Shown piece after piece: positions 26,859-52,373 of a stretch of 64,000 nt of DNA (position 1 is its first letter; every line of letters starts with the position of its first letter). The stretch comes from Euprymna scolopes (taxonomy: Eukaryota): NCBI GenBank assembly GCA_053919585.1, contig CM132816.1. One strand, 5' to 3'. Position numbers and translations under genes: made by a program. Under the pieces are notes generated by a model that was given only the letters and a program-made list of their open reading frames with translations, was not told where the DNA came from and made no database searches.

Positions 26859-28400
26859 AAAAAAAAAAACAGGACGAAAAGTCAATTGCCGAAAACATTA
26901 CTTATGTCAGTATTCGTCTCTCGAAATAAGTACCACGTCTTGCACCGGATGATGCACACAAAATTAGAAAATTCAGAATATTGTCTTTTTAACGCTTTTC
27001 CAAGTAATACCTTTCTTTGCTGTGCATTGACTGTATAAAATCGCATCAATCCAATTCGTTCCTTTCTTCTCGATTCGACGACACACGAGAACATATATCG
27101 TCGCTGCCAAAGCCAAGTTTATGGTCCGAATGCCCCTGGGGCAAGATAAAAAGTCTACGTCGAAATAAGTACCTAAGAAGGGACATACAAAGGGGGCGAA
27201 AGTGAAAGAACCCGAGAAATGGCGAAGAATACCACCGCTAATACCCGTCGTCGTCTATGACGGATCACGGGGACTAGACAGTCCCGTAACAAGACGTCGC
27301 GAGTCAAACCAAACTCTTCGACCCTGAGTGTTACTTTCCGTCAACATTAACAGCTTCGTTAACTGAGCCAAGTCTTTTTTAAAATCTGGTCCCCCTTTCT
27401 TTGCTGCGAGGCATTGACTGCGTCTAATTTTGGCCTTATGCCAAAATTAGACGCAGTCAATGCCTCGCAGCACTGAAGACTAAAGCGGAGGAACCCTTAG
27501 CAAAACAAGACGTCAAGAGCCTGTGGGACTAGACAGTCTTATCCAGTTCGTTTCAACGAGCTTCCGTAACAAGACGTCGCGAGTCAAGCCAAACTCTTCG
27601 ACCCTGATCAACCGAGTGTTACTTTCCGTCAACATTGCCTGAGGCTAACCTACTAACTTACCTCATTAGTTCAGTATCGGGTCCGAATGCCCCAGGGCCG
27701 AGATAAAGTCTACATTGCCTAGCTCTAGTTCGCTTCGACCAAGTCAGAGATGACATCCTGTAAGCGATTCGCAAAACTCTAGTAAAATCATCCAAGTTTT
27801 CCGCCGCAGGTATCCGTCAAGTTAAGTTATAGGACAAAATAAAAAGTCTACGTCGCCTCTTATCCAAAATGAGTACCTAACAAGTAGGCCACATATTGCA
27901 CCGGATGATCCACACAAAATCTGTCTCATCGTAACACCGGTCCCCGGATTGTGCGAGCGATAGGGTCCCGGTTTGTGCGGGTTTGAGGTTTGGAAACAAG
28001 TTCTTCGGTCGGGTTTGAGGTTTGGAAACAAGTTCTCATCGCCAGCCAGCAAGGCGTTTTTATGATAATTCCGTCATGTACTGTCTCCATTATGGTCCGA
28101 ATTGCCCCTACGTCGCCTCTTATAACATCCGATCGCCCTTTATAACATCCTAATTAGGCCACGTCTTGCACCGGATGATCCACACAAAATGTCTATTTCC
28201 CAGGACCAATTAGAAAATTCAGAATATTGTCTTTTTAACGCTTTTCCACGAAATACTCTTTGTTCTTGTATAAAATCGCATCAATCCAATTCGTTCTTTT
28301 CTTCTCGATTCGACGACACATGCATCGTCGCTGCCAAAGCCAAGTTAAGTTATGGTCCGAATGCCCCTGGGACAAGATAAAAAGTCTACGTCGAAATAAG

Positions 28401-28687
28401 TGTGGATAAAATGGCTTACCGTTAAAGAGGTTGCGCGTTTGTACCTGGAGAGCACAAACTAAAAATCAAGATGGCGCCCGCATGCGTTTATGTGGAAAAA
28501 AGTCTCGTGGAATCTCGTGGAATCTCGTACCCTGATTCCATAAATAACGAGAAAAGAAAAGCAGGAAGAGAGACGATTTTGAGTCACGAAAACGAACGGA
28601 CGTGTGTAGAAAGAAGAGGTAGAAGAAAAGAGTGTGGTAAACGAAACAAACAACGACTCGGTTGAAAGTAGAGTTGTAACCAACACA
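28401..28687. mobile_element. Solo LTR (287 bp) inserted in the satellite
   Basis: TGTG...CACA termini and a 5-bp TSD ataag (28396-28400, 28688-28692). It interrupts the satellite motif cgaaataagtacctaag. Confidence 0.85.
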
Positions 28688-31600
28688 ATAAGGAACTAAG
28701 GTCTGCTAAAGAAGGTATTCCAACAAAGACGTACGAAGGGGGCGAAAGTTAAAGAACCCAAGAGATGGCGAAGACTCCTATACCACCGCTATACTCGTCG
28801 GCGTCTATCACGGATTAAAACCGGCGGATTCTAGCTGATCAGCATGCCTTGCTACGATTGTTTGAATCGATAAGTTCGGTTCGCAGGCATCTTTGTCAAA
28901 TTTCAAGTTTTCCGCCGCACAATACCAGTCACTGAAGACTAACGCGGAGGAACGCTTAGCAAGACAATTCTAGCCTAGGGACTAGACCGTCTTATCGTTC
29001 CGACCTGCTTCAATTAGTTTCCGTGACGCCTCTTATCGAAAATAAGACCAGATCGAAAATGAGCATACACTGTCTCGAGTATGGTCCGAATTACCCCTAC
29101 GTCGCCCTTTCTAACATTTTAATTAGGCCACGTCTTGCACCGGATGATCCACACAAAATGTCTTTATTTCATCGCCAAAGCAAAGTCCGAATGACCCTGC
29201 GGCAAGATAAATAGTCTACGTCGAAATAAGTACCTAAGAAGTCTGTTAAAGAAGGCATTCCAACTTCAAGACGTACGAAGGGGGGGGGGGGCGAAAGGAT
29301 GGCGAAGACTCCTATACCACCGCTATACTCGTCGGCGTCTATCACGGATTAAAACTGGCGGATTCTAGCTGATCAGCATGCTTTGCTTACGATTGTTTGA
29401 ATCGATAAGTTTGGTTCGCAAGAATCTTTGTCAAAATCCAAGTTTTCCGCCGCACAATACCATTCACTGAAGACTAAAGGGGAGGAACGCTTAGCAAGAC
29501 AATCCAGGGGACGTATCAATCTTATCAATCCGGTTCGTTAGGAGCTTCCGTAACGCCTCTTATCGAAAATTAGACCAGATCGAAAATGATTGTCTTTTTA
29601 ACAAGAAATACTCTTTGTTCTTGTATAAAATCGCATCAATCCAATTCGTTCCTTTCTTCTCCATTCGACGACACATGAGAACATGCCTCGTCGCTGCTAA
29701 AGCAAAGTTATGGTCCGAATGCCCCTGTGGCAAGATAAATAGTCTACGTCGAAATAAGTACCTAAGAAGTCCGTTAAAGAAGGCATTCCAATTTCAAGAC
29801 GTACGAAGGGCGACGAAAGTTAAAGAACCCGAGAGATGGCGTCTATCACGGATTAAAACCGGCAGATTCTAGCTGATCAGCATGCCTTGCTACGATTGTT
29901 TGATTCGATAAGTTCGGTTCGCAAGCATCTTTGTCAAAATTCAAGTTTTCCGCCGCACAATACAATTCACTGAAGTGGAGGAACGCTTAGCAAGACAATT
30001 CTAGCCTAGGGACTAGACCGTCTTACGTTCCGACCTGCTTCAACGAGCATCCGTAACGCCTTTCATCGAAAATAAGACCAGATCGAAAATGAGCATGTAC
30101 TGTCTCGAGTATGGTCCGAATTACCCCTACGTCGCCTCTTGTAACATCCGATCGCCCTTTCTAACATCCTAATTAGGCCACGTTTTGCACCGGATGATCC
30201 ACACAAAATGTTTTTATTTCATCGTCGCTGCGGCAAGAGTCTACGTCGAAATAAGTACCTAAGAAGTTTGTTAAAGAAGGCATTCCAACTTCAAGACGTG
30301 CGAAAGGACGGCGAATACCAGTCACTGAAGACTAAAGCTTAGCAATACAATTCTGGGGACAAGACCGTCTTATCAATCCAGTTCGTTCCGATCTGCTGCT
30401 TCAACGAGCTCCCGTACCGCCCCTGATCAAAAATTAGTATCCTAACAAGTAGGCCACATATTGCACCGGATGATCCACATAAAATCTGTGTCATCGTAAC
30501 ACCGGTCCCCCTTGCTACGATTGTTTGAATCGATAAGTTTGGTTCGCAAGAATCTTTGTCAAAATCCAAGTTTTCCGCCGCACTCACTGAGGACCAAAGC
30601 GGAGGAACGGTTAGCAAGACAATCCTGGGGACGTATCAATCTTATCAATCCGGTTCGTTAGGAGCTTGCATCGAAAATTAGACAGCGAAAATGATTGTCT
30701 TCTTAACAAGAAATACTTTGTTATTGTATAAAATCGCGTCAATCCAATTTGTCCCTTTCTTCTCGATTCGACCACACATGAGAAAATGCCTCTCACTGCC
30801 AAATTATGGTCCGAATGCCCCTGCGGCAAAATACTCTACGTTGAAATAAGTACCTAAGAAGTCTGTTAAAGCAGCCATTCTAACTTCAAGGGGGGCGAAA
30901 GTTAAAGAACACGAGAGATGGCGAAGACTATACTCGTCGGCGTCTATCACGGATTAAAACCGGCGGATTCTAGCTAGCATGCCTTGCTACGATTGTTTGA
31001 TTCGATAAGTTCGGTTCGCAAGCAACTTTGTCAAAATTCAAGTTTTCCGCCGCACAATACCAGTCACTGAAGACTAAAGCGGAGGAACGCTTAGCAAGAC
31101 AATTCTAGCCTAGGGACTGATCAATCTTATTTATGCAGGTCGTTCCGACCTGCTTCAACGAGCTTCCGTGACGCCTCTTATCGAAAATTAGACCAGATCG
31201 AAAATGAGCATGTACTGTCTCGAGTATAGTCCGAATTACCCCTTCGTCGCCTCTTATAACATCCGATCGCCCTTTCTAACATCCGATTTAGGCCACGTCT
31301 TGCCCCGGATGTCTTTATTTCATAGTCGCTGCCAAAGTCAAGTTATGGTCCGAACGCCCCTGTGGCAAGATAGTCTACGTCGAAATAAGTGCCTAAGAAA
31401 GAAGGCATTCCAACTTCAAGACGTACGAAATGGGGCGAAAGATGGCGAAGACCGCTATACTCGTCGGAGTTCGTTCCGATCTGCTGCTTCAACGAGCTCC
31501 CGTACCGCCTCTTATCGAAAATAAGTCCTGATCGAAAATGAGTATCCTAACAAGTAGGCCACATATTGCACCGGATGATCCACATAAAATCTTTGTGATC

Positions 31601-34600
31601 ATAACACCGGTCCCCCTTGCTACGATTGTTTGAATCAATAAGTTTGGTTCGCAATCCAAGTTTTTCGCCGCATTCACTGAGGACTAAAGCGGAGGAACGC
31701 TTAGCAAGACAATCCTGGGGACGCATCAATCTCATCACTGGTTCGTTAAGATATTGCATAGCGCCTCGTATCGAAAATTAGACCACAACCCAATTTGTCC
31801 CTTTCTTCTCGATTCGATCACACATGAGAAAATGCCTCTCACTGCCAAATCTAAGTTATGCGGCAAAATAAATAGTCTACGTTGAAATAAGTACCTAAGA
31901 AGTCTGTTAAAAAAGGCATTCCAACTTCAAGATGTACGAAGGGGGCGAAAGTTAAAGAACCCGAGATATGGCGGAGACTATACTGGTCGGCGTCTATCAC
32001 GGATTAAAACCAGCGGATTCTAGCTAGCATGCCTTGCTACGATTGTTTCAATCGATAAGTTCGGTTCGTAAGCATTTTGTCAAAATTATAGTTTTCCGCC
32101 GCACAATACCAGTCACTGAAGACTAAAGCGGTGAAACGCCTAGGGACTGATCAATCTTATTAATGCAGGTCGTTCCGATTACCCCTTCGTCGCCTCTTAT
32201 AACATCCGATCGCCCTTTCTAATTAGGCCACGTCTTGCCCCGGATGATCCACACATAATGTCTTTATTTCATCGTCGCTGCCAAAGTCAAGTTATGGTCC
32301 GAATGCCCCTGTGGCAAGATAGTCTACGTCGAAATAAGTGCCTAAGAAAGTAGGCATTCCAACTTCAAGACGTACGAAATGTGACGAATGATGGCGAAGA
32401 CCGCTATACTCGCTGATGTTCGTTCCGATCTGCTGCTTCAACGAGCTCCCGTACCGCCTCTTATAAAAAATAAGTCTTGATCGAAAATGAGTATCCTAAC
32501 AAGTAGGCCACATATTGCACCGGATGATCCACATAAAATCTGTGTCCCCTTTGCTACGATTGTTTGAATCGACAAGTTTGGTTCGAAAGAATCTTTGTCA
32601 AAATCCAAATCCAATCTTATTAATGCAGGTTGTTCTGACCTGCTTCAACGAGCTTCCGTGATGCCTCTCATCGAAAATAAGACCAGATCGAAAATAAGCA
32701 TGTACTGTCTCGAGTATGATCCGAATTACTCCTTATAACATCCGATCGCCCTTCTAACATCTGAAGTGCCTAACAAATAAGGCATTCCAACTTTAAGACG
32801 TACGAAATATGGCGAAAGATGGCGAAGACCGCTATACTCGTCGGAGTTCGTTCGGATCTGCTGCTTCAACGAGCTCCCGTACCGCCTCTTTTTGAAAATA
32901 AGTCCTGATCGAAAATGAGTATCCTAACAAGTAGGCCACATATTGCACCGGATGATCCACATAAAATCTGTGTCATCGTAACACCGGTCCCCCTTGCTAC
33001 GATTGTTTGAATTTGGTTCGCAAGAATCTTTGTCAAAATCCAAGTTTTCCGCCGCACAATACCATTCACTGAGGACTAAAGCGGAGGAACGGTTAGCAAG
33101 ACAATCCTGGGGACGTATCAATCTTATCAATCCGGTTCATTAGGACCTTGCATAACGCCTCTTATCGAAAATTAGACTAGATCGAAAATGATTGTCTTTT
33201 TAACAAGAAATACTCTTCGTTCTCGTATAAAATTGCATCGTACCTTTAATCTCAATTTAACATGAGAAAATGCCTCTCACTGCCAAATCCAAGTTATGGT
33301 TTGAATCGATAAGTTTGGTTCGCAAGAATCGTTGTCAAAATCCAAGTTTTCCGCCGCACAATACCATTCACTGAGGAGTAAAGCGGAGGACGCTTAGCAA
33401 GACAATCCTGGGGACGTATCAATCTTATCAATCCGGTTCGTTAGGACCTTGCATAACGCCTCTTATCGAAAATTAGACTACAGCGAAAATGATTGTCTTT
33501 TTAACAAGAAATACTCTTTGTTCTTGTATAAAATCGCATCGTTCCTTTCATCTCAATTCAACATGAGAAAATGCCTCTCACTGCCAAATCCAAGTTATGG
33601 TTTGAATCGATAAGTTTGGTTCGCAAGAATCTTTGTCAAAATCCAAGTTTTCCGCCGCACAATACCATTCACTGAGGACTAAAGCGGAGGAACGGTTAGC
33701 AAGACAATCCTGGGGACGTATCAATCTTATCAATCCGGTTCGTTAGGACCTTGCATAACGCCTCTTATCGAAAATTAGACTACAGCGAAAATGATTCTTT
33801 TTAACAAGAAATACTCTTTGTTCTTGTATAAAATCGCATCGTTCCTTTCATCTCAATTCAACATGAGAAAATGCCTCTCACTGCCAAATCCAAGTTATGG
33901 TTTGAATCGATAAGTTTGGTTCGCAAGAATCTTTGTCAAAATCCAAGTTTTCCGCCGCACAATACCATTCACTGAGGACTAAAGCGGAGGAACGGTTAGC
34001 AAGACAATCCTGGGGACGTATCAATCTTATCAATCCGGTTCGTTAGGACCTTGCATAACGCCTCTTATCGAAAATTAGACTACAGCGAAAATGATTCTTT
34101 TTAACAAGAAATACTCTTTGTTCTTGTATAAAATCGCATCGTTCCTTTCATCTCAATTCAACATGAGAAAATGCCTCTCACTGCCAAATCCAAGTTATGG
34201 TTTGAATCGATAAGTTTGGTTCGCAAGAATCTTTGTCAAAATCCAAGTTTTTCGCCGCACAATACTGCGGACTAAAGCGGAGGAACGCTTAGCAAGACAA
34301 ATCCTAGGGACGCATCAATCTTATCACTTTGGTTCGTTAGGAGCTTGCATAACGCCTCTTATCGAAAATTAGACCAGATCGAAAATGATTGTCTTTTTAA
34401 CAAGAAATACTCTTTGTTCTTGTATAAAATCGCGTCAATCCAATTTGTCCCTTTCTTCTCGATTCGACCACACATGAGAAAATGCCTCTCACTGCCAAAT
34501 CTAAATTATGGTCCGAATGCCCCTGCGGCAAAATACTCTACGTTGAAATAAGTACCTAAGAAGTCTGTTAAAGAAGGCATTCTAACTTCAAGGGGGGCGA

Positions 34601-37600
34601 AAGTTAAAGAACCCGAGAGATGGCGAAGATATACTCGTCGGCGTCTATCACGGATTAAAACCGGCGGATTCTAGCTAGCATGCCTTGCTACGATTGTTTG
34701 ATTCGATAAGTTCGGTTCGCAAGCAACTTTGTCAAAATTCAAGTTTTCCGCCACACAATACCAGTCGCTGTAGACTAAAGCGGAGAAACGCTTAGCAAGA
34801 CAATTCTAGCCTAGGGACTGATCAATCTTATTTATGCAGGTTGTTCCGACCTGCTTCAACGAGCTTCCGTGACGCCTCTCATTGAAAATAAGACCAGATC
34901 GAAAATGAGCATGTACTGTCTCGAGTATGGTCCGAATTACCCCTACGTCGCCTCCTATAACATCCGATCGCCCTTTCTAACATCCGACTTAGGCCACGTC
35001 TTGCCCCGGATGATCAACACATGAGGTCTTTATTTCATCGTCGCTGTTATGGTCCGAATGCCCCAATGGCAAGATAGTCTACGTCGAAAGAAGGCATTCC
35101 AACTTCAAGACGTACGAAATGGGGCGAAAGATGGCCAAGACCGCTATACTCGTCGGAATTCGTTCCGATCTGCTGCTTCAACGAGCTCCCGTACCGCCTC
35201 TTATCGAAAATAAGTCCTGATCGAAAATGAGTATCCTAACAAGTAGGCCACATATTGCACCGGATGATCCACATAAAATCTGTGTCATCCCCCTTGCTAC
35301 AATTGTTGGAATCGATAAGATTGGTTCACAATCCAAGTTTTTCGCCGCACAATACCATTCACTGAGGACTAAAGCGGAGGAACGCTTAGCAAGACAATCC
35401 TAGGGCCGTATCAATCTTATCAATCCGGTTCGTTAGGAGCTTCTTATCGAAAATTAGACCAGATCGAAAATGATTGTCTTTTTAACAAGAAATACTCTTC
35501 GTTCTTGTATAAAATTGCATCGTTCCTTTCATCTCAATTCAACATGAGAAAATGCCTCTTACTGCCAAATCCAAGTTATGGTTTGAATCGATAAGTTTGG
35601 TTCGCAAGAATCTTTGTCAAAATCCAAGTTTTCCGCCGCACAATACCATTCACTGAGGACTAAAGCGGAGGAACGGTTAGCAAGACAATCCTGGGGACGT
35701 ATCAATCTTATCAATCCGGTTCGTTAGGACCTTGCATAACGCCTCTTATCGAAAATTAGACTACAGCGAAAATGATTCTTTTTAACAAGAAATACTCTTT
35801 GTTCTTGTATAAAATCGCATCGTTCCTTTCATCTCAATTCAACATGAGAAAATGCCTCTCACTGCCAAATCCAAGTTATGGTTTGAATCGATAAGTTTGG
35901 TTCGCAAGAATCTTTGTCAAAATCCAAGTTTTTCGCCGCACAATACTGCGGACTAAAGCGGAGGAACGCTTAGCAAGACAATCCTAGGGACGCATCAATC
36001 TTATCACTTTGGTTCGTTAGGAGCTTGCATAACGCCTCTTATCGAAAATTAGACCAGATCGAAAATGATTGTCTTTTTAACAAGAAATACTCTTTGTTCT
36101 TGTATAAAATCGCGTCAATCCAATTTGTCCCTTTCTTCTCGATTCAACCACACATGAGAAAATGCCTCTCACTGCCAAATCTAAATTATGGTCCGAATGC
36201 CCCTGCGGCAAAATACTCTACGTTTAAATAAGTACCTAAGAAGTCTGTTAAAGAAGGCATTCTAACTTCAAGGGGGGCGAAAGTTAAAGAACCCGAGAGA
36301 TGGCGGAGACTATACTCGTCGGCGTCTATCACAGATTGAAACCGGCGGATTCTTGCTAGCAAGCCTTACTACGATTGTTTGAATCGATAAGTTTGGTTCG
36401 CAAGAATCATTGTCAAAATCCAAGTTTTTCGCTGCGGACTAAAGCGGACGAACGCTTAGCAAACAATCCTGGGGACGCATCTATCTTATGACTTGCATTC
36501 GTTAGGAGCTTGCATAACGAAAATTAGACTACAGCGAAAATGATTGTCTTTTTAACAAGAAATACTCTTTGTTCTTGTATAAAATTGCATCGTTCCTTTC
36601 ATCTCAATTCAACATGAGAAAATGCCTCTCACTGCCAAATCCAAGTTATGGTTTGAATCGATTTGGTTCGCAAGAATCTTTGTCAAAATCCAAGTTTTTC
36701 GCCGCACAATACTGCGGACTAAAGCGGAGGAACGCTTAGCAAGACAATCCTAGGGACGCATCAATCTTATCACTTTGGTTCGTTAGGAGCTTGCATAACG
36801 CCTCTTATCGAAAATAAGACCAGATCGAAAATGATTGTCTTTTTAACAAGAAATACTCTTTGTTCTTGTATAAAATCGCGTCAATCCAATTTGTCCCTTT
36901 CTTCTCGATTCAACCACACATGAGAAAATGCCTCTCACTGCCAAATCTAAATTATGGTCCGAATGCCCCTTCGGCAAAATACTCTACGTTGAAATAAGTA
37001 CCTAAGAAGTCTGTTAAAGAAGGCATTCTAACTTCAAGGGGGGCGAAAGTTAAAGAACCCGAGAGATTGCGAAGATTATACTCGTCGGCGTCTATCACGG
37101 ATTAAAACCGGCGGATTCTTGCTAGCAAGCCTTGCTACGATTGTTTGATTCGATAAGTTCGGTTCGCAAGCAACTTTGTCAAAATTCAAGTTTTCCGCCA
37201 CACAATACCAGTCACTGTAGACTAAAGCGGAGAAACGCTTAGCAAGACAATTCTAGCCTAATGACTGATCAATCTTATTTATGCAGGTTGTTCCGACCTG
37301 CATCAACGAGCTTCCGTGACGCCTCTCATTGAAAATTAGACCAGATCGAAAATGAGCATGTACTGTCTCGAGTATGGTCCGAATTACCCCTACGTCGCCT
37401 CCTATAACATCCGATCGCCCTTTCTAACATCTGACTTAGGCCACGTCTTGCCCCGGATGATCAACACATGAGGTCTTTATTTCATCGTCGCTGTTATGGT
37501 CCGAATGCCCCAATGGCAAGATAGTCTACGTCGAAAGAAGGCATTCCAACTTCAAGACGTACGAAATGGGGCGAAAGATGGCCAAGACCGCCATACTCGT

Positions 37601-40600
37601 CGGAATTCGTTCCGATCTGCTGCTTCAACGAGCTCCCGTACCGCCTCTTATCGAAAATAAGTCCTGATCGAAAATGAGTATCCTAACAAGTAGGCCACAT
37701 ATTGCACCGGATGATCCACATAAAATCTGTGTCATCCCCCTTGCTACAATTGTTGGAATCGATAAGATTGGTTCACAATCCAAGTTTTTCGCCGCACAAT
37801 ACCATTCACTGAGGACTAAAGCGGAGGAACGCTTAGCAAGACAATCCTAGGGCCGTATCAATCTTATCAATCCGGTTCGTTAGGAGCTTCTTATCGAAAA
37901 TTAGACCAGATCGAAAATGATTGTCTTTTTAACAAGAAATACTCTTCGTTCTTGTATAAAATTGCATCGTTCCTTTCATCTCAATTCAACATGAGAAAAT
38001 GCCTCTTACTGCCAAATCCAAGTTATGGTTTGAATCGATAAGTTTGGTTCGCAAGAATCTTTGTCAAAATCCAAGTTTTCCGCCGCACAATACCATTCAC
38101 TGAGGACTAAAGCGGAGGAACGGTTAGCAAGACAATCCTGGGGACGTATCAATCTTATCAATCCGGTTCGTTAGGACCTTGCATAACGCCTCTTATCGAA
38201 AATTAGACTACAGCGAAAATGATTCTTTTTAACAAGAAATACTCTTTGTTCTTGTATAAAATCGCATCGTTCCTTTCATCTCAATTCAACATGAGAAAAT
38301 GCCTCTCACTGCCAAATCCAAGTTATGGTTTGAATCGATAAGTTTGGTTCGCAAGAATCTTTGTCAAAATCCAAGTTTTTCGCCGCACAATACTGCGGAC
38401 TAAAGCGGAGGAACGCTTAGCAAGACAATCCTAGGGACGCATCAATCTTATCACTTTGGTTCGTTAGGAGCTTGCATAACGCCTCTTATCGAAAATTAGA
38501 CCAGATCGAAAATGATTGTCTTTTTAACAAGAAATACTCTTTGTTCTTGTATAAAATCGCGTCAATCCAATTTGTCCCTTTCTTCTCGATTCAACCACAC
38601 ATGAGAAAATGCCTCTCACTGCCAAATCTAAATTATGGTCCGAATGCCCCTTCGGCAAAATACTCTGCGTTGAAATAAGTACCTAAGAAGTCTGTTAAAG
38701 AAGGCATTCTAACTTCAAGGGGGGCGAAAGTTAAAGAACCCGAGAGATGGCGAAGATTATACTCGTCGGCGTCTATCACGGATTAAAACCGGCGGATTCT
38801 TGCTAGCAAGCCTTGCTACGATTGTTTGATTCGATAAGTTCGGTTCGCAAGCAACTTTGTCAAAATTCAAGTTTTCCGCCACACAATACCAGTCACTGTA
38901 GACTAAAGCGGAGAAACGCTTAGCAAGACAATTCTAGCCTAATGACTGATCAATCTTATTTATGCAGGTTGTTCCGACCTGCATCAACGAGCTTCCGTGA
39001 CGCCTCTCATTGAAAATTAGACCAGATCGAAAATGAGCATGTACTGTCTCGAGTATGGTCCGAATTACCCCTACGTCGCCTCCTATAACATCCGATCGCC
39101 CTTTCTAACATCTGACTTAGGCCACGTCTTGCCCCGGATGATCAACACATGAGGTCTTTATTTCATCGTCGCTGTTATGGTCCGAATGCCCCAATGGCAA
39201 GATAGTCTACGTCGAAAGAAGGCATTCCAACTTCAAGACGTACGAAATGGGGCGAAAGATGGCCAAGACCGCCATACTCGTCGGAATTCGTTCCGATCTG
39301 CTGCTTCAACGAGCTCCCGTACCGCCTCTTATCGAAAATAAGTCCTGATCGAAAATGAGTATCCTAACAAGTAGGCCACATATTGCACCGGATGATCCAC
39401 ATAAAATCTGTGTCATCCCCCTTGCTACAATTGTTGGAATCGATAAGATTGGTTCACAATCCAAGTTTTTCGCCGCACAATACCATTCACTGAGGACTAA
39501 AGCGGAGGAACGCTTAGCAAGACAATCCTAGGGCCGTATCAATCTTATCAATCCGGTTCGTTAGGAGCTTCTTATCGAAAATTAGACCAGATCGAAAATG
39601 ATTGTCTTTTTAACAAGAAATACTCTTCGTTCTTGTATAAAATTGCATCGTTCCTTTCATCTCAATTCAACATGAGAAAATGCCTCTTACTGCCAAATCC
39701 AAGTTATGGTTTGAATCGATAAGTTTGGTTCGCAAGAATCTTTGTCAAAATCCAAGTTTTCCGCCGCACAATACCATTCACTGAGGACTAAAGCGGAGGA
39801 ACGGTTAGCAAGACAATCCTGGGGACGTATCAATCTTATCAATCCGGTTCGTTAGGACCTTGCATAACGCCTCTTATCGAAAATTAGACTACAGCGAAAA
39901 TGATTCTTTTTAACAAGAAATACTCTTTGTTCTTGTATAAAATCGCATCGTTCCTTTCATCTCAATTCAACATGAGAAAATGCCTCTCACTGCCAAATCC
40001 AAGTTATGGTTTGAATCGATAAGTTTGGTTCGCAAGAATCTTTGTCAAAATCCAAGTTTTTCGCCGCACAATACTGCGGACTAAAGCGGAGGAACGCTTA
40101 GCAAGACAATCCTAGGGACGCATCAATCTTATCACTTTGGTTCGTTAGGAGCTTGCATAACGCCTCTTATCGAAAATTAGACCAGATCGAAAATGATTGT
40201 CTTTTTAACAAGAAATACTCTTTGTTCTTGTATAAAATCGCGTCAATCCAATTTGTCCCTTTCTTCTCGATTCAACCACACATGAGAAAATGCCTCTCAC
40301 TGCCAAATCTAAATTATGGTCCGAATGCCCCTTCGGCAAAATACTCTGCGTTGAAATAAGTACCTAAGAAGTCTGTTAAAGAAGGCATTCTAACTTCAAG
40401 GGGGGCGAAAGTTAAAGAACCCGAGAGATGGCGAAGATTATACTCGTCGGCGTCTATCACGGATTAAAACCGGCGGATTCTTGCTAGCAAGCCTTGCTAC
40501 GATTGTTTGATTCGATAAGTTCGGTTCGCAAGCAACTTTGTCAAAATTCAAGTTTTCCGCCACACAATACCAGTCACTGTAGACTAAAGCGGAGAAACGC

Positions 40601-43600
40601 TTAGCAAGACAATTCTAGCCTAGGGACTGATCAATCTTATTTATGCAGGTTGTTCCGACCTGCTTCAACGAGCTTCCGTGACGCCTCTCATTGAAAATTA
40701 GACCAGATCGAAAATGAGCATGTACTGTCTCGAGTATGGTCCGAATTACCCCTACGTCGCCTCCTATAACATCCGATCGCCCTTTCTAACATCCGACTTA
40801 GGCCACGTCTTGCCCCGGATGATCAACACATGAGGTCTTTATTTCATCGTCGCTGTTATGGTCCGAATGCCCCAATGGCAAGATAGTCTACGTCGAAAGA
40901 AGGCATTCCAACTTCAAGACGTACGAAATGGGGCGAAAGATGGCCAAGACCGCTATACTCGTCGGAATTCGTTCCGATCTGCTGCTTCAACGAGCTCCCG
41001 TACCGCCTCTTATCGAAAATAAGTCCTGATCGAAAATGAGTATCCCACATATTGCACCGGATGATCCACATAAAATCTGTGTCATCCCCCTTGCTACAAT
41101 TGTTGGAATCGATAAGATTGGTTCACAATCCAAGTTTTTCGCCGCACAATACCATTCACTGAGGACTAAAGCGGAGGAACGCTTAGCAAGACAATCCTAG
41201 GGCCGTATCAATCTTATCAATCCGGTTCGTTAGGAGCTTCTTATCGAAAATTAGACCAGATCGAAAATGATTGTCTTTTTAACAAGAAATACTCTTTGTT
41301 CTTGTATAAAATTGCATCGTTCCTTTCATCTCAATTCAACATGAGAAAATGCCTCTCACTGCCAAATCCAAGTTATGGTTTGAATCGATAAGTTTGGTTC
41401 GCAAGAATCTTTGTCAAAATCCAAGTTTTCCGCCGCACAATACCATTCACTGAGGACTAAAGCGGAGGAACGGTTAGCAAGACAATCCTGGGGACGTATC
41501 AATCTTATCAATCCGGTTCGCCTCTTATCGAAAATTAGACTACAGCGAAAATGATTGTCTTTTTAACAAGAAATACTCTTTGTTCTTGTATAAAATCGCA
41601 TCGTTCCTTTCATCTCAATTCAACATGAGAAAATGCCTCTCACTGCCAAACTTGGTTATGGTTTGAATCGATAAGTTTGGTTCGCAAGAATCTTTGTCAA
41701 AATCCAAGTTTTTCGCCGCACAATACTGCGGACTAAAGCGGAGGAACGCTTAGCAAGACAATCCTAGGGACGCATCAATCTTATCACTTTGGTTCGTTAG
41801 GAGCTTGCATAACGCCTCTTATCGAAAATTAGACCAGATCGAAAATGATTGTCTTTTTAACAAGAAATACTCTTTGTTCTTGTATAAAATCGCGTCAATC
41901 CAATTTGTCCCTTTCTTCTCGATTCAACCACACATGAGAAAATGCCTCTCACTGCCAAATCTAAATTATGGTCCGAATGCCCCTGCGGCAAAATACTCTA
42001 CGTTTAAATAAGTACCTAAGAAGTCTGTTAAAGAAGGCATTCTAACTTCAAGGGGGGCGAAAGTTAAAGAACCCGAGAGATGGCGGAGACTATACTCGTC
42101 GGCGTCTATCACAGATTGAAACCGGCGGATTCTTGCTAGCAAGCCTTACTACGATTGTTTGAATCGATAAGTTTGGTTCGCAAGAATCATTGTCAAAATC
42201 CAAGTTTTTCGCTGCGGACTAAAGCGGACGAACGCTTAGCAAACAATCCTGGGGACGCATCTATCTTATCACTTGCATTCGTTAGGAGCTTGCATAACGA
42301 AAATTAGACTACAGCGAAAATGATTGTCTTTTTAACAAGAAATACTCTTTGTTCTTGTATAAAATTGCATCGTTCCTTTCATCTCAATTCAACATGAGAA
42401 AATGCCTCTCACTGCCAAATCCAAGTTATGGTTTGAATCGATTTGGTTCGCAAGAATCTTTGTCAAAATCCAAGTTTTTCGCCGCACAATACTGCGGACT
42501 AAAGCGGAGGAACGCTTAGCAAGACAATCCTAGGGACGCATCAATCTTATCACTTTGGTTCGTTAGGAGCTTGCATAACGCCTCTTATCGAAAATTAGAC
42601 CAGATCGAAAATGATTGTCTTTTTAACAAGAAATACTCTTTGTTCTTGTATAAAATCGCGTCAATCCAATTTGTCCCTTTCTTCTCGATTCAACCACACA
42701 TGAGAAAATGCCTCTCACTGCCAAATCTAAATTATGGTCCGAATGCCCCTGCGGCAAAATACTCTACGTTGAAATAAGTACCTAAGAAGTCTGTTAAAGA
42801 AGGCATTCTAACTTCAAGGGGGGCGAAAGTTAAAGAACCCGAGAGATGGCGGAGACTATACTCGTCGGCGTCTATCACAGATTGAAACCGGCGGATTCTT
42901 GCTAGCAAGCCTTGCTACGATTGTTTGAATCGATAAGTTTGGTTCGCAAGAATCATTGTCAAAATCCAAGTTTTTCGCTGCGGACTAAAGCGGACGAACG
43001 CTTAGCAAACAATCCTGGGGACGCATCTATCTTATCACTTGCATTCGTTAGGAGCTTGCATAACGAAAATTAGACTACAGCGAAAATGATTGTCTTTTTA
43101 ACAAGAAATACTCTTTGTTCTTGTATAAAATCGCGTCAATCCAATTTGTCCCTTTCTTCTCGATTCGACCACACACGAGAAAATGCCTCTCACTGCCAAA
43201 TCTAAATTATGGTCCGAATGCCCCTGCGGCAAAATACTCTACGTTGAAATAAGTACCTAAGAAGTCTGTTAAAGAAGGCATTCTAACTTCAAGGGGGGCG
43301 AAAGTTAAAGAACCCGAGAGATGGCGGAGACTATACTCGTCGGCGTCTATCACAGATTGAAACCGGCGGATTCTTGCTACCAAGCCTTGCTACGATTGTT
43401 TGAATCGATAAGTTTGGTTCGCAAGCAACTTTGTCAAAATTCAAGTTTTCCGCCACACAATACCAGTCACTGTAGACTAAAGCGGAGAAACGCTTAGCAA
43501 GACAATTCTAGCCTAGGGACTGATCAATCTGCATAAGCAGGTTGTTCCGACCTGCTTCAACGAGCTTCCGTGACGCCTCTCATTGAAAATAAGACCAGAT

Positions 43601-46600
43601 CGAAAATGAGCATGTACTGTCTCGAGTATGGTCCGAATTACCCCTACGTCGCCTATTACATCCGATCGCCCTTTCTAACATCCGACTTAGGCCACGTCTT
43701 GCCCCGGATGATCAACACATGAGGTCTTTATTTCATCGTCGCTGTTATGGTCCGAATGCCCCAATGGCAAGATAGTCTACGTCGAAAGAAGGCATTCCAA
43801 CTTCAAGACGTACGAAATGGGGCGAAAGATGGCCAAGACCGCTATACTCGTCGGAATTCGTTCCGATCTGCTGCTTCAACGAGCTCCCGTACCGCCTCTT
43901 ATCGAAAATAAGTCCTGATCGAAAATGAGTATCCTAACAAGTAGGCCACATATTGCACCGGATGATCCACATAAAATCTGTGTCATCCCCCTTGCTACAA
44001 TTGTTGGAATCGATAAGATTGGTTCACAATCCAAGTTTTTCGCCGCACAATACCATTCACTGAGGACTAAAGCGGAGGAACGCTTAGCAAGACAATCCTA
44101 GGGACGTATCAATCTTATCAATCCGGTTCGTTAGGAGCTTCTTATCGAAAATTAGACCAGATCAAAAATGATTGTCTTTTTAACAAGAAAATCTCTTTGT
44201 TCTTGTATAAAATTGCATCGTTCCTTTCATCTCAATTCAACATGAGAAAATGCCTCTCACTGCCAAATCCAAGTTATGGTTTGAATCGATAAGTTTGGTT
44301 CGCAAGAATCTTTGTCAAAATCCAAGTTTTCCGCCGCACAATACCATTCACTGAGGACTAAAGCGGAGGAACGGTTAGCAAGACAATCCTGGGGACGTAT
44401 CAATCTTATCAATCCGGTTCGTTAGGACCTTGCATAACGCCTCTTATCGAAAATTAGACTACAGCGAAAATGATTGTCTTTTTAACAAGAAATACTCTTT
44501 GTTCTTGTATAAAATCGCATCGTTCCTTTCATCTCAATTCAACATGAGAAAATGCCTCTCACTGCCAAACTTGGTTATGGTTTGAATCGATAAGTTTGGT
44601 TCGCAAGAATCTTTGTCAAAATCCAAGTTTTTCGCCGCACAATACTGCGGACTAAAGCGGAGGAACGCTTAGCAAGACAATCCTAGGGACGCATCAATCT
44701 TATCACTTTGGTTCGTTAGGAGCTTGCATAACGCCTCTTATCTTGCATAACGCCTCTTATCGAAAATTAGACCAGATCGAAAATGATTGTCTTTTTAACA
44801 AGAAATACTCTTTGTTCTTGTATAAAATCGCGTCAATCCAATTTGTCCCTTTCTTCTCGATTCAACCACACATGAGAAAATGCCTCTCACTGCCAAATCT
44901 AAATTATGGTCCGAATGCCCCTGCGGCAAAATACTCTACGTTGAAATAAGTACCTAAGAAGGCATTCTAACTTCAAGGGGGGCGAAAGTTAAAGAACCCG
45001 AGAGATGGCGAAGATATACTCGTCGGCGTCTATAACCGGCGGATTCTAGCTAGCATGCCTTGCTACGATTGTTTGATTCGATAAGTTCGGTTCGCAAGCA
45101 ACTTTGTCAAAATTCAAGTTTTCCGCCACACAATACCAGTCACTGAAGACATTGTACCGGATGATCCACATAAAATTTGTGTCATCATAACACCGGTTGC
45201 TACGATTGTTTGAATCGATAAGTTTGGTTCGCAAGAATCTTTGTCAAAATAGAAGTTTTCCGTCGCACAATCGCGGAGGAACGCTTAGCAAGACAATCCT
45301 GGGGACGTATCAATCTGATCAATCCGGTTCGTTAGGATCTTTCGTAACGCTTCTTATCGAAAATTAGACTACAACGAAAATGATTGTAATGTAAGAAATA
45401 CTCTTTGTTCTTGTACAAAATCGCATCAATCCAATTCGTTCCTTTCTTCTCGAGTCGACGACACATGAGAAAAGGCCTCTCACTGCCAAATCTAAGTTAT
45501 GGTCCGAATGCCCCTGCGGCAAGATAAATAGTCTACGTCGAAAAAAATACATGCATTCCAAATTCAAGACGTACGAAAGGGGGCGAAAGTGAAAGAACCC
45601 AAGAAATGGCGAAGACTCCTATACCACGTCTATCACGGATTATAACCGGCGGATTATACCTGATCAGCATGCCTTGCTTACGATTGTTTGAATCGATAAG
45701 TTCGGTTCTTTGTCAAAATTCAAGTTTTCCTTCGCACTATTGTGGAACGTAGGAACTCTTAGCAAGACAATTCTTAAGAGCCTGAGGACCGTCTTATCAA
45801 TCGTATCAATCCAGTTCGTTTCGATCAATCCAGTCTTTATTTCATCGTCGCTGCCAAAGTCGTTATGGTCCGAATGCCCCTGTTGCAAGATAGTCTACGT
45901 CGAAATAAGTACCTAAGAAATCTGTGAAAGAGTATTTCTTGTTAAAAAGACAATCATTTTCGATCTGGTCTTATAAGAGGCGTTATCTTGCCGCAGGGGC
46001 ATTCGGACCATAACTTGGATTTGGCAGTGAGAGGCATTTTATCATGTGTGGTCGAATCGAGAAGAAAGGAACGAATTGGATTGATGCGATTTTATACAAG
46101 AACAAAGAGTATTTCTTGGAAAAGCGTTAAAAAAGACAATCATTTTCGCTCTGGTCTAATTTTCAATAAGAGCTTGTAACGAACTGGATTGATAAGATTA
46201 ATCCGTCCCCAGGATTGCCTTGCTTGGATTTGACAAAGATTCTTTCGAACAAACTTATCGATTAAAACAATCGTAGCAAGGGGACCGGTGTTACGATGAC
46301 ACAGATTTTATGTGACTCATCCGGTTCGCCGTTTAGGATACTCATTTTCGATCAGGACTTATTTTCGATAAGAGGCGTTACGGATATTCGTTGAAGCAGA
46401 TCGGAACTTCGCAGGGCATTCGGACCATAACTAGCGACGATTAAATAAAGACATTTTGTGTGGATCATCATTTTGTGTGGATCAGCAAGACGTGGCCTAA
46501 TTAAGATGTTAGAAAGGGCGACGTAGGGGTAATTCGGACCATGCTCATTTTCGATCTGGTCTTATTTTCGATAAGCTCGTTGAAACAGATCGGACCGACC

Positions 46601-49037
46601 TGCATTGATAAGATTGATAAGACGGTCTAGGCTAGAATTGTCTTGCTAAGCGTTCCTCCGCTTCTTCAGTGACTTTGTGCGACGGAAAACGTGAATTTCG
46701 ACAAAGATGCTTGCGAACCGAACTTATCGATTCAACGCAAGGCATGCTGATTAGCTAGAATCCGCCGGTTTTAATCCGTGATAGACGCCGACGAGTGTAG
46801 CGGTCGGCGTCTATCACGGATTATAACCGGCGGATTCCAGCTTGCGTTGATTGTTTGAATCGATAAGTTCGGTTCGCAAGCATCTTTGTCAAAATTCAAG
46901 TTTTCCGCATCACAATACGAGTCACTGAACAGTAAAGTGAAGGGACGCTTAGCAAGACAATTCTAGCCTAGGGACTAGACCGTCTGATCAACGGCTTCCG
47001 TGACGCCTCTTATTGAAAATAAGACCTGATCGAAAATGAGCATGTACTGTCACGAGAATTACCCTTACGTCGCCTCTTATAACATCCGATCGCCCTTTCT
47101 AACATCCGAGTTATGCCACTTCTTGCCCTGGATGATCCACACATAATGTCTTTATTTCATGTCGAAATAAGTACCTAAGAAGTCTGTTAAACCCGAGAGA
47201 TACTCGTCGATTGGATTGATGCGATTTTATACAAGAACAAAGAGTATTTCTTGAAAAAGCATTAAAAACACAATATTCTGAATTTTCTGAATATTCTGAA
47301 TTTTCTAATTTGGAAAAAAAGACATTTTGTGTGGATCATCCAATGCAAGACGTGGCCTAATTAGAATATCATAAAGGGCGATCGGATGTTATAAGAGGGG
47401 ACATAGGGGTAATTCGGACCATACTCGAGACAGTACATGACGGAATTGTCATAAAAACGCCTGGGACCGACCGAAGGAGGAACCGCACAAACCGGGACCC
47501 TATCGCTTGCACAATCGGTGTTACGATGAGACAGATTTTGCGTGGATAACGCGGTGCAATATGTGGCCTACTTGTTAGGTACTCATTTTCGATCTGGTCT
47601 CATTTTCGATAAGATTGATAAGATTGATAAGACGGTCTGGTCGCCAGGCTCTTAAGAATTGTCTTGCTAAGCGTTCCTCCGCTTTGGTCTTCAGTGACTT
47701 GTGCGGCGGAAAACTTGAATTGTATATTTATTCAAACAATCGTAAACATCGTAAGCATGCTGATCAGCTAGAATCCGCCGGTTTTAATCCGTGATAGACG
47801 CCGTATAGCGATGGTATAGGAGTCTTCGCCATCTCTCGGGTACGTCTTGAAGTTGGAATGCCTTCTTTAACAGACTTCTTAGGTACTTATTTCGGCGTAG
47901 ACTAATTATCTTGCCGCAGGGGCATTCGGACCATAAAGGGCGATCGATGATAAATTATAAATGATAAATGATAGGATGATAAAAGAGGCGACGTAGGGGT
48001 AATTCGGAAAATATCATTTCCGATAAGACGCGTCACGGAAGCTCGTTGAAGCAGGTCGGAACGACCTGCATTGATAAGATTGATAAGATGGTCTAGGCTA
48101 GAATTGTCTTGCTAAGCGTTCCTCCGCTTTAGTCTTCAGTGCGGCGGAAAACTTGAATTTTGACAAAGATGCTTGCGAACCGAATCTATCGATTCAAACA
48201 ATCGTAGCAAGGCATGCTGATCAGCTAGAATCCGCCGGTTTTAATCCGTGATAGACGCCGACGTATAGGAGTCTTCGCCATCTCTCGGGTTCTTTAACTT
48301 TTCGTACGTCTTGAAGTTCCAACTGCTTTAACAGACTTCTTAGGTACTTATTTCGACGTAGACTATTTATCTTGCCGTAGGGGCATTCGGACCATAACTT
48401 GGCTTTGGAAGCGACGATGCCAGTGAAGAGGCATGTTCTCATGTGTCGTCGTATGGAGAAGACAGGAACGAATTGGATTGATGCGATTTTATACCAGAAC
48501 AAAGAGTATTTCTTGGAAAAGCGTTAAAAAGAAAATCATTTTCGATCTGGTCTAATTTTCGATAAGAGGCGTTACTGAAAGCTCGTAACGAACTGGATTG
48601 ATAAGATTGATACGTCCCCAGGATTGTCTTGCTAAGCGTTCCTTCGCTTTAGTCTTCAGTGAATGGTATTGTGCGGCGGAAACTTGGATTTTGACAAAGA
48701 TTCTTGAGAACCAAACTTATCGATTCAAACAATCGTAGCAAGGGGACCGGTGTTACGATGAGACAGATTTTGTGTGGATCATCCAGTGCAATATGTGGCC
48801 TACTTGTTAGGATACTCATTTACCTATTTTCGATGAGAGGCGTTACGGAAGCTCGTTGAAGCAGGTCGGAACGAACTGGATTGATAAGATTGATAAGGCT
48901 CTTAAGAATTGTCTTGCTAAGCATTCCTCCGCTTTAGTCTTCAGTGCGAAGGAAAACTTGAATTGGGGGGGGGAGCCTTTTAGTGCGTGTGCTTCTGCGA
49001 TAGTTCAGATTCGGGCTCTGGATCTGGTTCCACCTCA

Positions 49038-49473
49038 TCAGACGAAGGAGGGGGCTTTACTGAATCCGTGTATCGGCAGCTCATCTTCACTGCTTTCTTC
49101 CGGTAGAAGTTTTCGGGAAGCAAATTTTTCATAGGCTCCATGGCGAATGCCTTTGTACAGCGCAGCTATAATTGCGGTGACATTGATCTTTCTCTTCGTC
49201 CAACTTGGACACAGCCTGACGCTCACTATAGTATGTGATATGTGATATAGTACATTGATGAAGATGTACAGTTTGCGTCGTGTGTCAAAGAAAAGTTGGC
49301 TTAGTTTTGTCTGGAATGCAAGAATCCCAAACGTTAGATGGAAGAAGCACGTGTATCTCAATACACGTGCTTGGATGTTTATGAGGAAGATGGCACCCCA
49401 TAATGGAGGCGTGGCAGCGAAATTCCAACAAGGCCGACCGTTTTTGCATAGCCACGGGTTGTTGGGATGACAT
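49038..49473 (-). pseudogene. Orphan intronless ORF, apparently disrupted; product unknown
   Basis: Lies in a unique ~550-bp island in the satellite. The frame from ATG 49473 joins the C-terminal frame ending at 49038 if one TGA (49285-49287) is read through and a 7-bp tandem duplication (tatgtga x2, ~49232-49245) is removed. Confidence 0.35.
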
Positions 49474-51450: not shown

Positions 51451-51695
51451 TCATGACTGATGTAGCCGTAAAGAATGGGTTCCAACTTGAACTCAGCACC
51501 TGAAAAGTAACATTCAAATTCTCTAACCAGCAACTGTCCGAGAGACTAGTTAGAGTCCGAACACGGTACCCCAGTTCGATACAAAACACCTGATGAAGGC
51601 AAAACGGCCGAAACGTTGTGACTATAACAACCAGTCCGACAATCTCAATAAATGAAAACACCTCATCTCAAAAATACAGACAATTAATATTTTGA
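51451..51695 (+). mobile_element. Penelope-like element pLTR fragment with hammerhead motif (51587-51620)
   Basis: CAC-CTGATGA-AGGC aaaacg GCC-GAAA-CGTT-GTG followed by AATAAA (~51647) is the usual layout of Penelope-like pseudo-LTRs. Confidence 0.7.
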
Positions 51696-52253
51696 CCTCT
51701 AACCAGTTTTTGCGGACAATCCCCGATTGTCAACTTGTCAACTGAGTAAGAGTTTTTAAGACTGAGTAAAAGTTTTTAAGAGTTTTCATATCCCGGTACC
51801 TCACTCTTAAATCGTACAATGCTTCAATTGAAAAATGTTGCAGCCATTTTGGCATATTACAACGCCATTATGTCATTAAAATTACATAAAGTAAAGTTGG
51901 AACAGTTTACAATTTAAATCGTAAACCGTTCGAACACGGGACTGATTTTCAGCAATTTTAATAAGCTCAATGTTGCTTAATTTTGATGATGACTAAGATT
52001 AAACTTGCTTAAGTAGATTAAACTTGGTTTACTTCATTTTGACGGTGACTAACATTAAACTTGCTAAACTAGTTAAACTTGCTTAATTAGTTAATAGGTT
52101 ATCTCTACTGGTAATGGTAATGGTAATACCAAGTGACTTCCCTTCTGTTCATGTTGTGATTTAAGTGATTTAAGCTGCAGTATATTGGGATTGTTGCTGG
52201 AGACGAGTAGATTTAATGGGTGATTGAAATGCCATTAAAGCGATCAATCTATA

Positions 52254-52373
52254 GACAGATTTTGTCTGGATCATCCGGTGCAGGACGTAGCATACTTTTT
52301 AGTACTTATTTTGATCGGATGTTAGAAGAGGCCATTTTAATTTGCCCCACGGACATTCGGACCATAACTTAGC
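52254..52373 (-). repeat. Isolated inverted copy of satellite modules outside the array
   Basis: Reverse complement of aagttatggtccgaatg, taacatccgatc, aaataagtac and gcaccggatgatcca..caaaatctgtct. Confidence 0.8.

What the first reader, a model, noticed from the sequence alone, without database searches (positions are those of the whole stretch)
26900..45926. Satellite birth visible in order: long ancestral unit, then deletion-derived monomers, then higher-order repeats
Seen: edge copies (27.7-28.4 kb, 47.2-47.7 kb, 49.5-51.4 kb) keep segments missing centrally, such as ggaccaattagaaaattcagaatattg and gggtttgaggtttggaaacaag. At 28.7-33 kb there are ~530-bp monomers in which the hub gatcgaaaatga branches into three alternative cassettes (gcatgtactgtctcgag.., ttgtctttttaacaag.., gtatcctaacaagtagg..). 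A deletion joining aagttatgg to tttgaatcg creates an exact 300-bp monomer (33601, 33901, 34201). One marker then recurs at 34345, 36025, 36791, 38472, 40153, 41805 and 42571, giving spacings of 1680, 766, 1681, 1681, 1652 and 766: two interleaved higher-order units. Inference: a homogeneous core with divergent edges is the layered architecture known from centromeric arrays, here compact, modular and with its ancestor preserved.
Basis: partly seen in the sequence, partly recalled or inferred. Interest (0 to 1): 0.78.

Follow-up and report, generated by a model that had tools for sequence, protein, structure and literature searches.

The report
Single-locus satellite built from transposon scraps
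A 24.5-kb block of tandem repeats, found at only one place in a 5.9-Gb (probably cephalopod) genome, grew from a scrambled fragment of a LINE retrotransposon plus a piece of an LTR-like promoter, and it still shows the steps from long unit to short unit to higher-order repeat; it is a clear but ordinary example, and nothing marks it as a centromere.

Summary

**Structure.** The array runs from about 26,915 to 51,460 and has three nested shells:
- Outer copies: best partner 76-89 % identical.
- Middle shell of 420-630-bp monomers: 78-97 %.
- Core at 33.0-44.6 kb: 98-100 %. It holds 300-bp monomers and a 1.68-kb higher-order unit present 4-5 times at 97.2-99.6 %.

**Origin.** The ancestor is a patchwork of two dispersed elements.
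- Most modules are antisense pieces of the ORF2 of a dispersed LINE (nhmmer E down to 4e-20).
- The module with the CCAAT and TATA motifs matches a dispersed 0.9-kb LTR-like element.

With these two elements as outgroups, the central monomers are the deleted, derived state.

**Centromere reading.** This is not supported.
- The monomers match nowhere else in the assembly.
- Short-read contig depth fits only a few to about a dozen copies per monomer contig.
- Poly(A) RNA reads are absent over 27.0-32.4 kb.
- Homogeneous centres with divergent ends are a general property of tandem arrays (PMC5615363).

This is a new member of a known kind, the transposon-derived satellites. Earlier reports of this scan describe other single-locus satellites in the same genome.

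The parts
26915..28402 (+). Left outer shell: long, little-deleted units (modules B-Cc-Ct-A-D-E, F long form, L2, cas1-B-Cc-Ct-A). Includes a 38-nt-arm palindrome at 27397-27477.
   Evidence: Module map; best partner 82-87 %; LINE profile hits at 27710-27789 (E 3e-13) and 27114-27162; X1 DNA contigs at depth 12-16 with 0-1 differences; palindrome.
28403..28705 (.). Insertion of an unrelated, very high-copy dispersed repeat between modules A and D of one outer unit.
   Evidence: No self-match within the array; X1 contig word depth is 20,000-50,000 against about 14 for neighbouring single-copy sequence.
28706..33011 (+). Left middle shell: 420-630-bp monomers of types F-G-hub-Ct-A-D and F-G-hub-cas1-B-A-D, with fragments.
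   Evidence: Module map; best partner 82-97 %; all F modules carry the 34-bp deletion relative to the LINE.
33012..34200 (+). Run of four 300-bp monomers (F-G-hub-Ct) in which modules A and D are deleted at the junction aagttatgg|tttgaatcg.
   Evidence: TRF period 300, 4.7 copies, 96 %; junction positions; identical copies.
34201..44580 (+). Core of higher-order repeats. The 1.68-kb unit (a 1381-bp composite plus a 300-mer) lies at 34201, 36652, 38329 and 40010, with a diverged copy at 42924. A 770-bp pair of monomers lies at 35882 and 41662. A 5.8-kb super-duplication joins 33636-37198 to 39454-42978.
   Evidence: Self-BLAST; unit identities 97.2-99.6 %, diverged copy 94.9-96.4 %, 770-bp pair 99.87 %; tiles 98-100 %.
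44581..45930 (+). Right middle shell in + orientation: divergent monomers.
   Evidence: Best partner 79-92 %; module map.
45931..48955 (-). Right middle shell in mixed, mostly inverted orientation: - at 45954-46804, + at 46803-47151, - at 47210-48946. Keeps one copy with the Cc module (47270-47310).
   Evidence: Inverted HSPs; module strands; GC-skew flip at 46-50 kb.
48956..49530 (.). Unique island inside the array, holding a 155-aa ORF on the minus strand with no Pfam match.
   Evidence: No self-match; ORF 49038-49505; Pfam blank.
49531..51460 (+). Right outer shell: the most LINE-like copies (F long form at 49557-49664 and 50474-50552; L1 at 50698-50789 and 51256-51344; L2 at 51378-51434; A-hub-B at 51011-51132) and the LTR-like Cc-Ct module at 49986-50127. 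Palindrome at 50931-50988.
   Evidence: nhmmer E 4e-20, 1e-16, 3e-11, 2e-8, 2e-11; alignments A2 and A3; palindrome.
52203..52645 (+). Degraded relic of the same LINE family outside the array, in the opposite orientation (LINE sense on the + strand).
   Evidence: nhmmer hits on the minus strand to the antisense profiles: 52380-52251 (E 1.9e-13) and 52645-52508 (E 1.1e-11).

Best explanation
This is a private, single-locus satellite derived from transposable elements. Shown: its building blocks are pieces of the ORF2 of a dispersed LINE, from the end of the endonuclease domain to the C-terminal region, lying antisense on the window's + strand. They are joined to a roughly 150-240-bp piece of the CCAAT/TATA region of a dispersed 0.9-kb LTR-like element. 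Inferred: this scrambled patch was duplicated in tandem. Shown by outgroup comparison and nested shared deletions: copies in the interior then lost segments step by step. First came a 34-bp deletion in the RT-derived module. Then the CCAAT part, or alternatively the cas1-B part, was lost, giving monomers of about 500 bp in several sublineages. Then modules A and D were lost, giving the 300-bp monomer. Inferred from the pattern: unequal crossing-over or gene conversion amplified a block of monomers from at least three sublineages into a 1.68-kb higher-order unit (4-5 copies, 97-99.6 % alike), and later a 5.8-kb block containing it. The centre is thereby kept homogeneous, while the ends, which take part in fewer exchanges, stayed divergent; the right end was also inverted. 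No function is indicated, and the array is most likely neutral by-product DNA.
For: Repeat extent and periods. All reader strings verified. Module map with strands. Identity gradient of 76-89 %, 78-97 % and 98-100 %. Higher-order copies at 97.2-99.6 % against 80-90 % between different monomer types inside a unit. LINE origin: the family encodes Exo_endo_phos and RVT_1. nhmmer profile hits are E 4e-20 (F), 3e-11 (L1), 2e-8 (L2), 2e-11 (A-hub-B) and 9e-5 (D, weak); tblastn agrees. LTR-like origin of Cc-Ct. That element has TG..CA ends, 4-bp target duplications readable in four of the five complete aligned copies, and at least 1776 candidate copies. Polarity: alignments A2 and A3. Tree: the outer copies are separated by 100/100 branches, and the core falls into at least 3 lineages, two of which have middle-shell relatives. 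Private to the locus. Copy number: X1 contig depth is 46-156 in monomers against 12-16 at the single-copy edge.
Against: The exact founding structure could not be reconstructed. The module order is not collinear with one LINE copy, and modules E and most of G have no identified source. The homology of module D to the LINE is weak (E 1e-3 to 9e-5). The genome search scores only the best candidates and skips very common words, and one query failed to return even its own locus, so 'nowhere else' is a strong indication rather than a proof. The order of units in the near-identical core was not checked against long reads. Expression of the core itself was not tested.
Confidence: 0.8

Rival explanations
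1. The array is a centromeric or neocentromeric satellite of this chromosome, and its layered structure reflects centromere evolution.
For: It has a homogeneous core with divergent flanks and higher-order repeats. It sits at 31.7 Mb of an 87.6-Mb contig, an interior position.
Against: The array is only 24.5 kb in a 5.9-Gb genome. The monomers match no other place in the assembly. Short-read contig depth implies roughly 3-11 copies per monomer contig. The flanks are ordinary AT-rich sequence with no further satellite within the window or 10 kb beyond it. Layering is generic to tandem arrays (PMC5615363). No library paper linking cephalopods, satellite DNA and centromeres addressed this repeat.
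Confidence: 0.03
2. The array is a working source of antisense LINE RNA, such as piRNA or siRNA precursors. Each unit keeps the TATA part of the LTR-like promoter, which points along the + strand and so would produce RNA antisense to the LINE ORF2 pieces.
For: The LTR-like module has the same orientation as the array's + strand, and the TATA motif is kept even in the 300-bp monomers. All LINE-derived modules are antisense on that strand. One poly(A) RNA library (X15) has two perfect contigs, at 27106-27309 and 27732-27882.
Against: Two raw poly(A) RNA-seq runs give essentially zero depth over 27.0-32.4 kb. The few reads there run on into unlike sequence and belong to dispersed copies. The CCAAT part is lost from all central units. 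LINE similarity in central monomers is reduced to stretches of about 25-80 nt. The X15 contigs may be DNA carry-over. Small-RNA data were not available.
Confidence: 0.06
3. The near-identical core is partly an assembly artefact, with mis-ordered, over-expanded or collapsed copies, so the apparent higher-order pattern is unreliable.
For: Many 250-bp tiles are 100 % identical to a partner, and blocks of 1.7-5.8 kb are 97-99.9 % alike, which is hard to assemble. No raw DNA reads or long reads could be laid. My one read-laying run covered only 26401-32400.
Against: Higher-order copies differ by private substitutions and indels (unit lengths 1681, 1677, 1681, 1652) in a consistent pattern. A 2019 short-read data set reproduces the edge sequence with 0-1 differences per contig, and shows monomer contigs at a few-fold to about 11-fold single-copy depth, in line with the assembled copy number.
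Confidence: 0.08

Closest known systems
Transposon-derived satellites, e.g. tandem R1 (non-LTR) and Bari1/hobo arrays in Drosophila (McGurk & Barbash 2018, PMC5932611)
   Same: A tandem array whose unit is recognisably transposon sequence. It is at one locus and expanded from a few copies by unequal exchange.
   Different: Here the unit is not a whole or simply 5'-truncated element. It is a scrambled, heavily deleted internal ORF2 fragment fused to a piece of a second, LTR-like element. No head-to-tail junction of complete elements is visible, so the double-insertion mechanism is not shown.
Single-locus satellites derived from LTR retrotransposons in plants, e.g. Sobo of Solanum bulbocastanum and potato centromere repeats (from my own knowledge, not checked here)
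   Same: A long, complex monomer partly homologous to LTR sequence, restricted to one chromosomal site, and young.
   Different: Those arrays are hundreds of kb to Mb long and, in potato, bind CENH3. This one is 24.5 kb, with no evidence of any chromatin role.
Primate alpha-satellite higher-order repeat arrays with monomeric flanks
   Same: Monomer sublineages diverged first, then a multi-monomer block was amplified. Higher-order copies are far more alike (97-99.6 %) than the monomers within a unit (80-90 %). The flanks are older and more divergent.
   Different: The scale is kb rather than Mb. The array is private to one locus, its monomers are of unequal length (274-630 bp) created by deletions, and it is not known to be centromeric.
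Other single-locus satellites already reported by this scan in the same genome (s1-244913, 51-bp unit; s1-272079, 13-bp unit)
   Same: Single-place arrays with nested higher-order structure, read as ordinary products of unequal exchange.
   Different: Those have short simple units of unknown origin. This one has long composite units whose transposon origin and deletion series can be traced.

Membership tests
Satellite DNA with higher-order repeats | Head-to-tail tandem copies of a monomer | tested here: met
   TRF period 300; self-BLAST; module map.
Satellite DNA with higher-order repeats | Multi-monomer units more alike than their constituent monomers | tested here: met
   1.68-kb units are 97.2-99.6 % alike. 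Monomer types inside a unit are 80-90 % alike over the shared F-G-hub part.
Transposon-derived satellite | Monomer sequence homologous to a dispersed transposable element, with the element as the source | tested here: met
   LINE ORF2 profiles hit modules F, L1, L2 and A-hub-B at E 4e-20 to 2e-8. The matched LINE regions are coding (Pfam RVT_1 and Exo_endo_phos). The LTR-like element has at least 1776 candidate copies, and the array keeps only fragments of both.
Centromeric satellite | Major, abundant repeat forming very long arrays, usually shared among chromosomes | tested here: not met
   24.5 kb in total. All genome matches lie inside the window. Contig depth is 3-11 times single copy.
Centromeric satellite | Bound by the centromeric histone (CENP-A/CenH3) and located at the primary constriction | not testable with these tools
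   No ChIP or cytological data were available.
piRNA cluster | Dense small-RNA production from the locus | not testable with these tools
   No small-RNA runs were offered. Poly(A) RNA reads are absent over 27.0-32.4 kb.
piRNA cluster | Accumulation of fragments of many transposon families, often antisense | tested here: inconclusive
   Fragments are antisense to a LINE. However, only two element families are represented, and both were amplified as one unit rather than accumulated by independent insertions.

The most novel reading that the evidence does not exclude
The array is a home-grown silencing locus. It would consist of dozens of tandem units, each keeping the TATA-containing part of an LTR-like promoter aimed so as to transcribe antisense copies of a LINE ORF2, giving a unistrand source of antisense or piRNA precursors against that LINE family in a cephalopod.
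Probability: 0.05. Interest if true: 0.6.

Novelty: new member of a known kind. Interest (0 to 1): 0.3.

Why it matters
Satellites are known to arise from transposons, but the intermediate steps are rarely kept together in one locus. This array keeps them together:
- The source elements still exist as dispersed families, so they can serve as outgroups.
- The deletion series is nested in space.
- The higher-order stage is visibly built from older monomer sublineages.

That makes it a tidy teaching case and a possible calibration set for models of array evolution. It does not change what is known about satellite birth, and it gives no handle on cephalopod centromeres.

Tried and rejected
- **RNA genes.** An Rfam scan at gathering thresholds and a tRNA scan of the whole window found nothing, so the units are not RNA gene repeats.
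- **Coding repeat.** No ORF of 120 aa or more lies in the array apart from the unique island, and that ORF has no Pfam match.
- **Genome-wide satellite.** Searches of the whole assembly with the 300-mer and with modules D and E returned only this locus. A third query (34500-35330) returned almost nothing, not even itself, and I treat it as a tool limitation rather than evidence.
- **Whole ancestral unit as a dispersed element.** This is rejected. Dispersed copies share only 45-90-nt stretches with the array.
- **LTR-like element and LINE being one element.** There is no similarity between them.
- **Same family as the LINE at 1.7-5.8 kb of the window.** Only 26 % protein identity, so it is a different family.
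- **Collinear reconstruction of the founding LINE fragment.** The module order is not collinear with one LINE copy, so I give no single founding structure.
- **Organism.** It was not named by any tool.
- **Consensus sequences.** The profile HMMs of LINE copies served only as search queries.
Full report
**1. What is there**

Self-comparison of the window shows one repeat-rich block from about 26.9 to 50.5 kb and nothing related elsewhere in the window. Nothing related lies in the 10 kb fetched on each side of the window either. Tandem Repeats Finder reports a 300-bp period at 33.0-34.4 kb and again at 35.3, 37.8, 39.5, 41.1 and 44.0 kb.

The block is richer in G+C (about 41-45 %) than most of its flanks (27-39 %). 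Its GC skew flips at 46-50 kb, which matches inverted self-matches there.

There are no Rfam families, no tRNAs and no long ORFs in the repeats. A degraded LINE with endonuclease and reverse-transcriptase domains lies at 1.7-5.8 kb, so this is a eukaryotic genome. The window is C34:31,744,001-31,808,000 of a 5.9-Gb, 925-contig assembly, and the contig is 87.6 Mb long. RNA runs that hold parts of the stretch are labelled mollusc or invertebrate metagenome. An earlier report of this scan calls the genome a cephalopod. I did not verify that label.

**2. Check of the observation**

- The two 'edge-only' markers occur only at 26963/28203/49986 and at 27979/28011/49840.
- The hub gatcgaaaatga occurs 36 times and is followed by one of the three named continuations.
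- The junction aagttatgg|tttgaatcg occurs 14 times, all within 33.3-44.3 kb.
- Five full-length copies of the 300-bp monomer are letter-for-letter identical (33601, 33901, 35582, 38029, 39710). The copy at 44280 is identical over the 190-bp F-G-hub part.

With the anchor tttgaatcg, the core reads as A(300) B(1381) A C(496) D(274) B A B A B A' C D. The 1.68-kb unit A+B is present four times at 97.2-99.6 % identity, plus a fifth, more diverged copy (94.9-96.4 %). The C+D pair is present twice with one mismatch in 770 bp. A larger duplication joins 33636-37198 to 39454-42978 at 97.6 %.

The identity gradient is real. The best non-self partner of 250-bp tiles is 76-89 % in the outermost parts, 78-97 % in the middle parts and 98-100 % at 33.4-44.5 kb.

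Three corrections apply:
- The array continues beyond 45,926, in mixed orientation, to about 51,460.
- Middle-shell monomers vary from about 420 to 630 bp.
- The three cassettes are not equivalent (see section 4).

**3. Where the units come from**

Whole-genome searches with the outer copies returned hundreds of short matches on many contigs. I fetched 18 of these places. They belong to two dispersed families.

*An LTR-like element.* This is a discrete repeat of about 0.9 kb with TG..CA ends. Target-site duplications of 4 bp can be read in four of the five complete aligned copies, and there are at least 1776 candidate copies, all stand-alone. It is a solo-LTR-like element. It carries a CCAAT motif, a TATA motif and a conserved stretch downstream. 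This part aligns with array modules Cc-Ct at 28203-28345, 49986-50127, 26962-27118 and 51130-51275.

*A LINE.* Its ORFs match Exo_endo_phos and RVT_1. Profile searches built from its copies hit the array as follows:

| Module | LINE region | Window position | E-value |
|---|---|---|---|
| F and the start of G | N-terminal RT | 49557-49664 | 4e-20 |
| F | N-terminal RT | 50475-50548 | 1e-16 |
| F | N-terminal RT | 27710-27789 | 3e-13 |
| L1 | ORF2 C-terminal region | 50698-50789 | 3e-11 |
| L2 | ORF2 C-terminal region | 51378-51434 | 2e-8 |
| A-hub-B | end of the endonuclease domain | 51011-51132 | 2e-11 |
| A | end of the endonuclease domain | 27114-27162 | 6.5e-7 |
| D | RT (weak) | 50185-50249 | 9e-5 |

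A translated search agrees for the RT and endonuclease pieces. The array's + strand corresponds to the LINE's antisense strand.

Modules E and most of G have no identified source. In a whole-genome search, the stretch 27130-27720, which holds D, E and a fragment of G, matches only this locus.

A separate relic of the same LINE lies at 52.2-52.65 kb, in the opposite orientation.

**4. Direction of change**

Because the two dispersed families are independent of the array, they can serve as outgroups.
- In the LTR-like element, the CCAAT part and the TATA part are contiguous. The outer array copies keep both, and all copies between 29.5 and 46.1 kb lack the CCAAT part.
- In the LINE, module F is about 108 nt long. 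The copies at 27714, 49557 and 50474 keep it, the copy at 50303 has lost 17 nt, and every copy between 28.86 and 48.7 kb has lost 34 nt.
- The A-D deletion that makes the 300-mer is found only at 33.3-44.3 kb.

The derived states are thus nested like shells.

The profile match also shows that A-hub-B is one continuous LINE stretch. The other two continuations are successive parts of the longer unit cas1-B-Cc-Ct-A, which is preserved at 28075-28402.

In a maximum-likelihood tree of the shared F-G-hub part, drawn with a midpoint root, the outer copies are separated from the inner ones by branches with 100/100 support. The core monomers fall into at least three lineages, two of which have a middle-shell relative. 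Monomer sublineages therefore existed before a block of them was amplified as the higher-order unit.

**5. Is it more than neutral DNA?**

The 300-mer and the stretch holding modules D and E match only this locus in the assembly.

In a 2019 data set held as contigs, the outer shell is reproduced with 0-1 differences per contig at word depth 12-16. Monomer-type contigs have depth 46-156, a few-fold to about eleven-fold. For comparison, an unrelated insert at 28.40-28.70 kb has depth 20,000-50,000. This fits the assembled copy number and argues against a large hidden array.

Two raw poly(A) RNA-seq runs give essentially no depth over 27.0-32.4 kb. The few reads near 28.2 and 28.6 kb run on into unlike sequence and belong to dispersed copies. 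One RNA library held as contigs has two perfect short contigs in the left outer shell, which may be low-level transcription or DNA carry-over.

No raw DNA reads were offered.

**6. Comparison with what is known**

That repeats in the centre of an array are homogenised more efficiently than those at its ends, and that divergent end variants can seed new satellites, is stated as a general rule in the review PMC5615363. That many satellites originate from transposons, and that tandem transposon copies can expand into arrays at single loci, is the subject of PMC5932611.

The present array fits these descriptions. It differs from the Drosophila cases in that its unit is a scrambled internal fragment of one element fused to a piece of another, not a complete element.

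A library search for cephalopod, satellite DNA and centromere found no paper whose title or abstract addresses a repeat of this kind; I did not read them in full.

**7. Verdict**

The order-of-events interpretation is supported and strengthened by outgroups. The centromere analogy is not supported.

The finding is a clean, well-preserved example of a known process: a new member of the transposon-derived satellites, at one locus. I score interest at 0.3.

The most novel reading still open is that the retained promoter pieces drive antisense LINE transcripts. I give that about 5 %.

Noticed in passing
window 26317-26858: A foldback or MITE-like element abuts the left end of the array. Its inverted arms are about 150 nt long (26317-26469 against 26720-26858, 97-100 % complementary), and A-runs flank it. 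RNA reads that map here carry loose ends, so they come from dispersed copies.
   Followed up: partly
window 28403-28705: A short insert of a very abundant dispersed repeat sits inside one outer unit. Contig word depth is 20,000-50,000 against about 14 for single-copy sequence. It contains a small 10-bp tandem (tctcgtggaa, 2.6 copies). The family was not identified.
   Followed up: no
window 27397-27477 and 50931-50988: Two near-perfect palindromes lie in the outer shells, with 38-nt and 27-nt arms and 4-5-nt loops. They may be scars of fold-back repair or inversion breakpoints.
   Followed up: no
window 52203-52645: A degraded relic of the same LINE family that supplied the array modules lies about 0.75 kb beyond the array end, in the opposite orientation. 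It may be what is left of a second copy present when the array formed.
   Followed up: partly
window 48956-49530: A unique island inside the array holds a 155-aa ORF on the minus strand with no Pfam match. It is already noted by the scan as a separate finding.
   Followed up: no
window 1696-5799: A degraded non-LTR retrotransposon on the + strand has its endonuclease and RVT_1 domains split over several ORFs. It belongs to a different family from the one in the array (26 % protein identity).
   Followed up: partly
L001-L008 and the genome at large: The 0.9-kb LTR-like element begins with a variable (CA)n or (TC)n microsatellite directly after its TG end. It has at least 1776 candidate copies at 83-93 % identity. 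No paired copies flanking an internal region appeared among the 40 best hits.
   Followed up: partly
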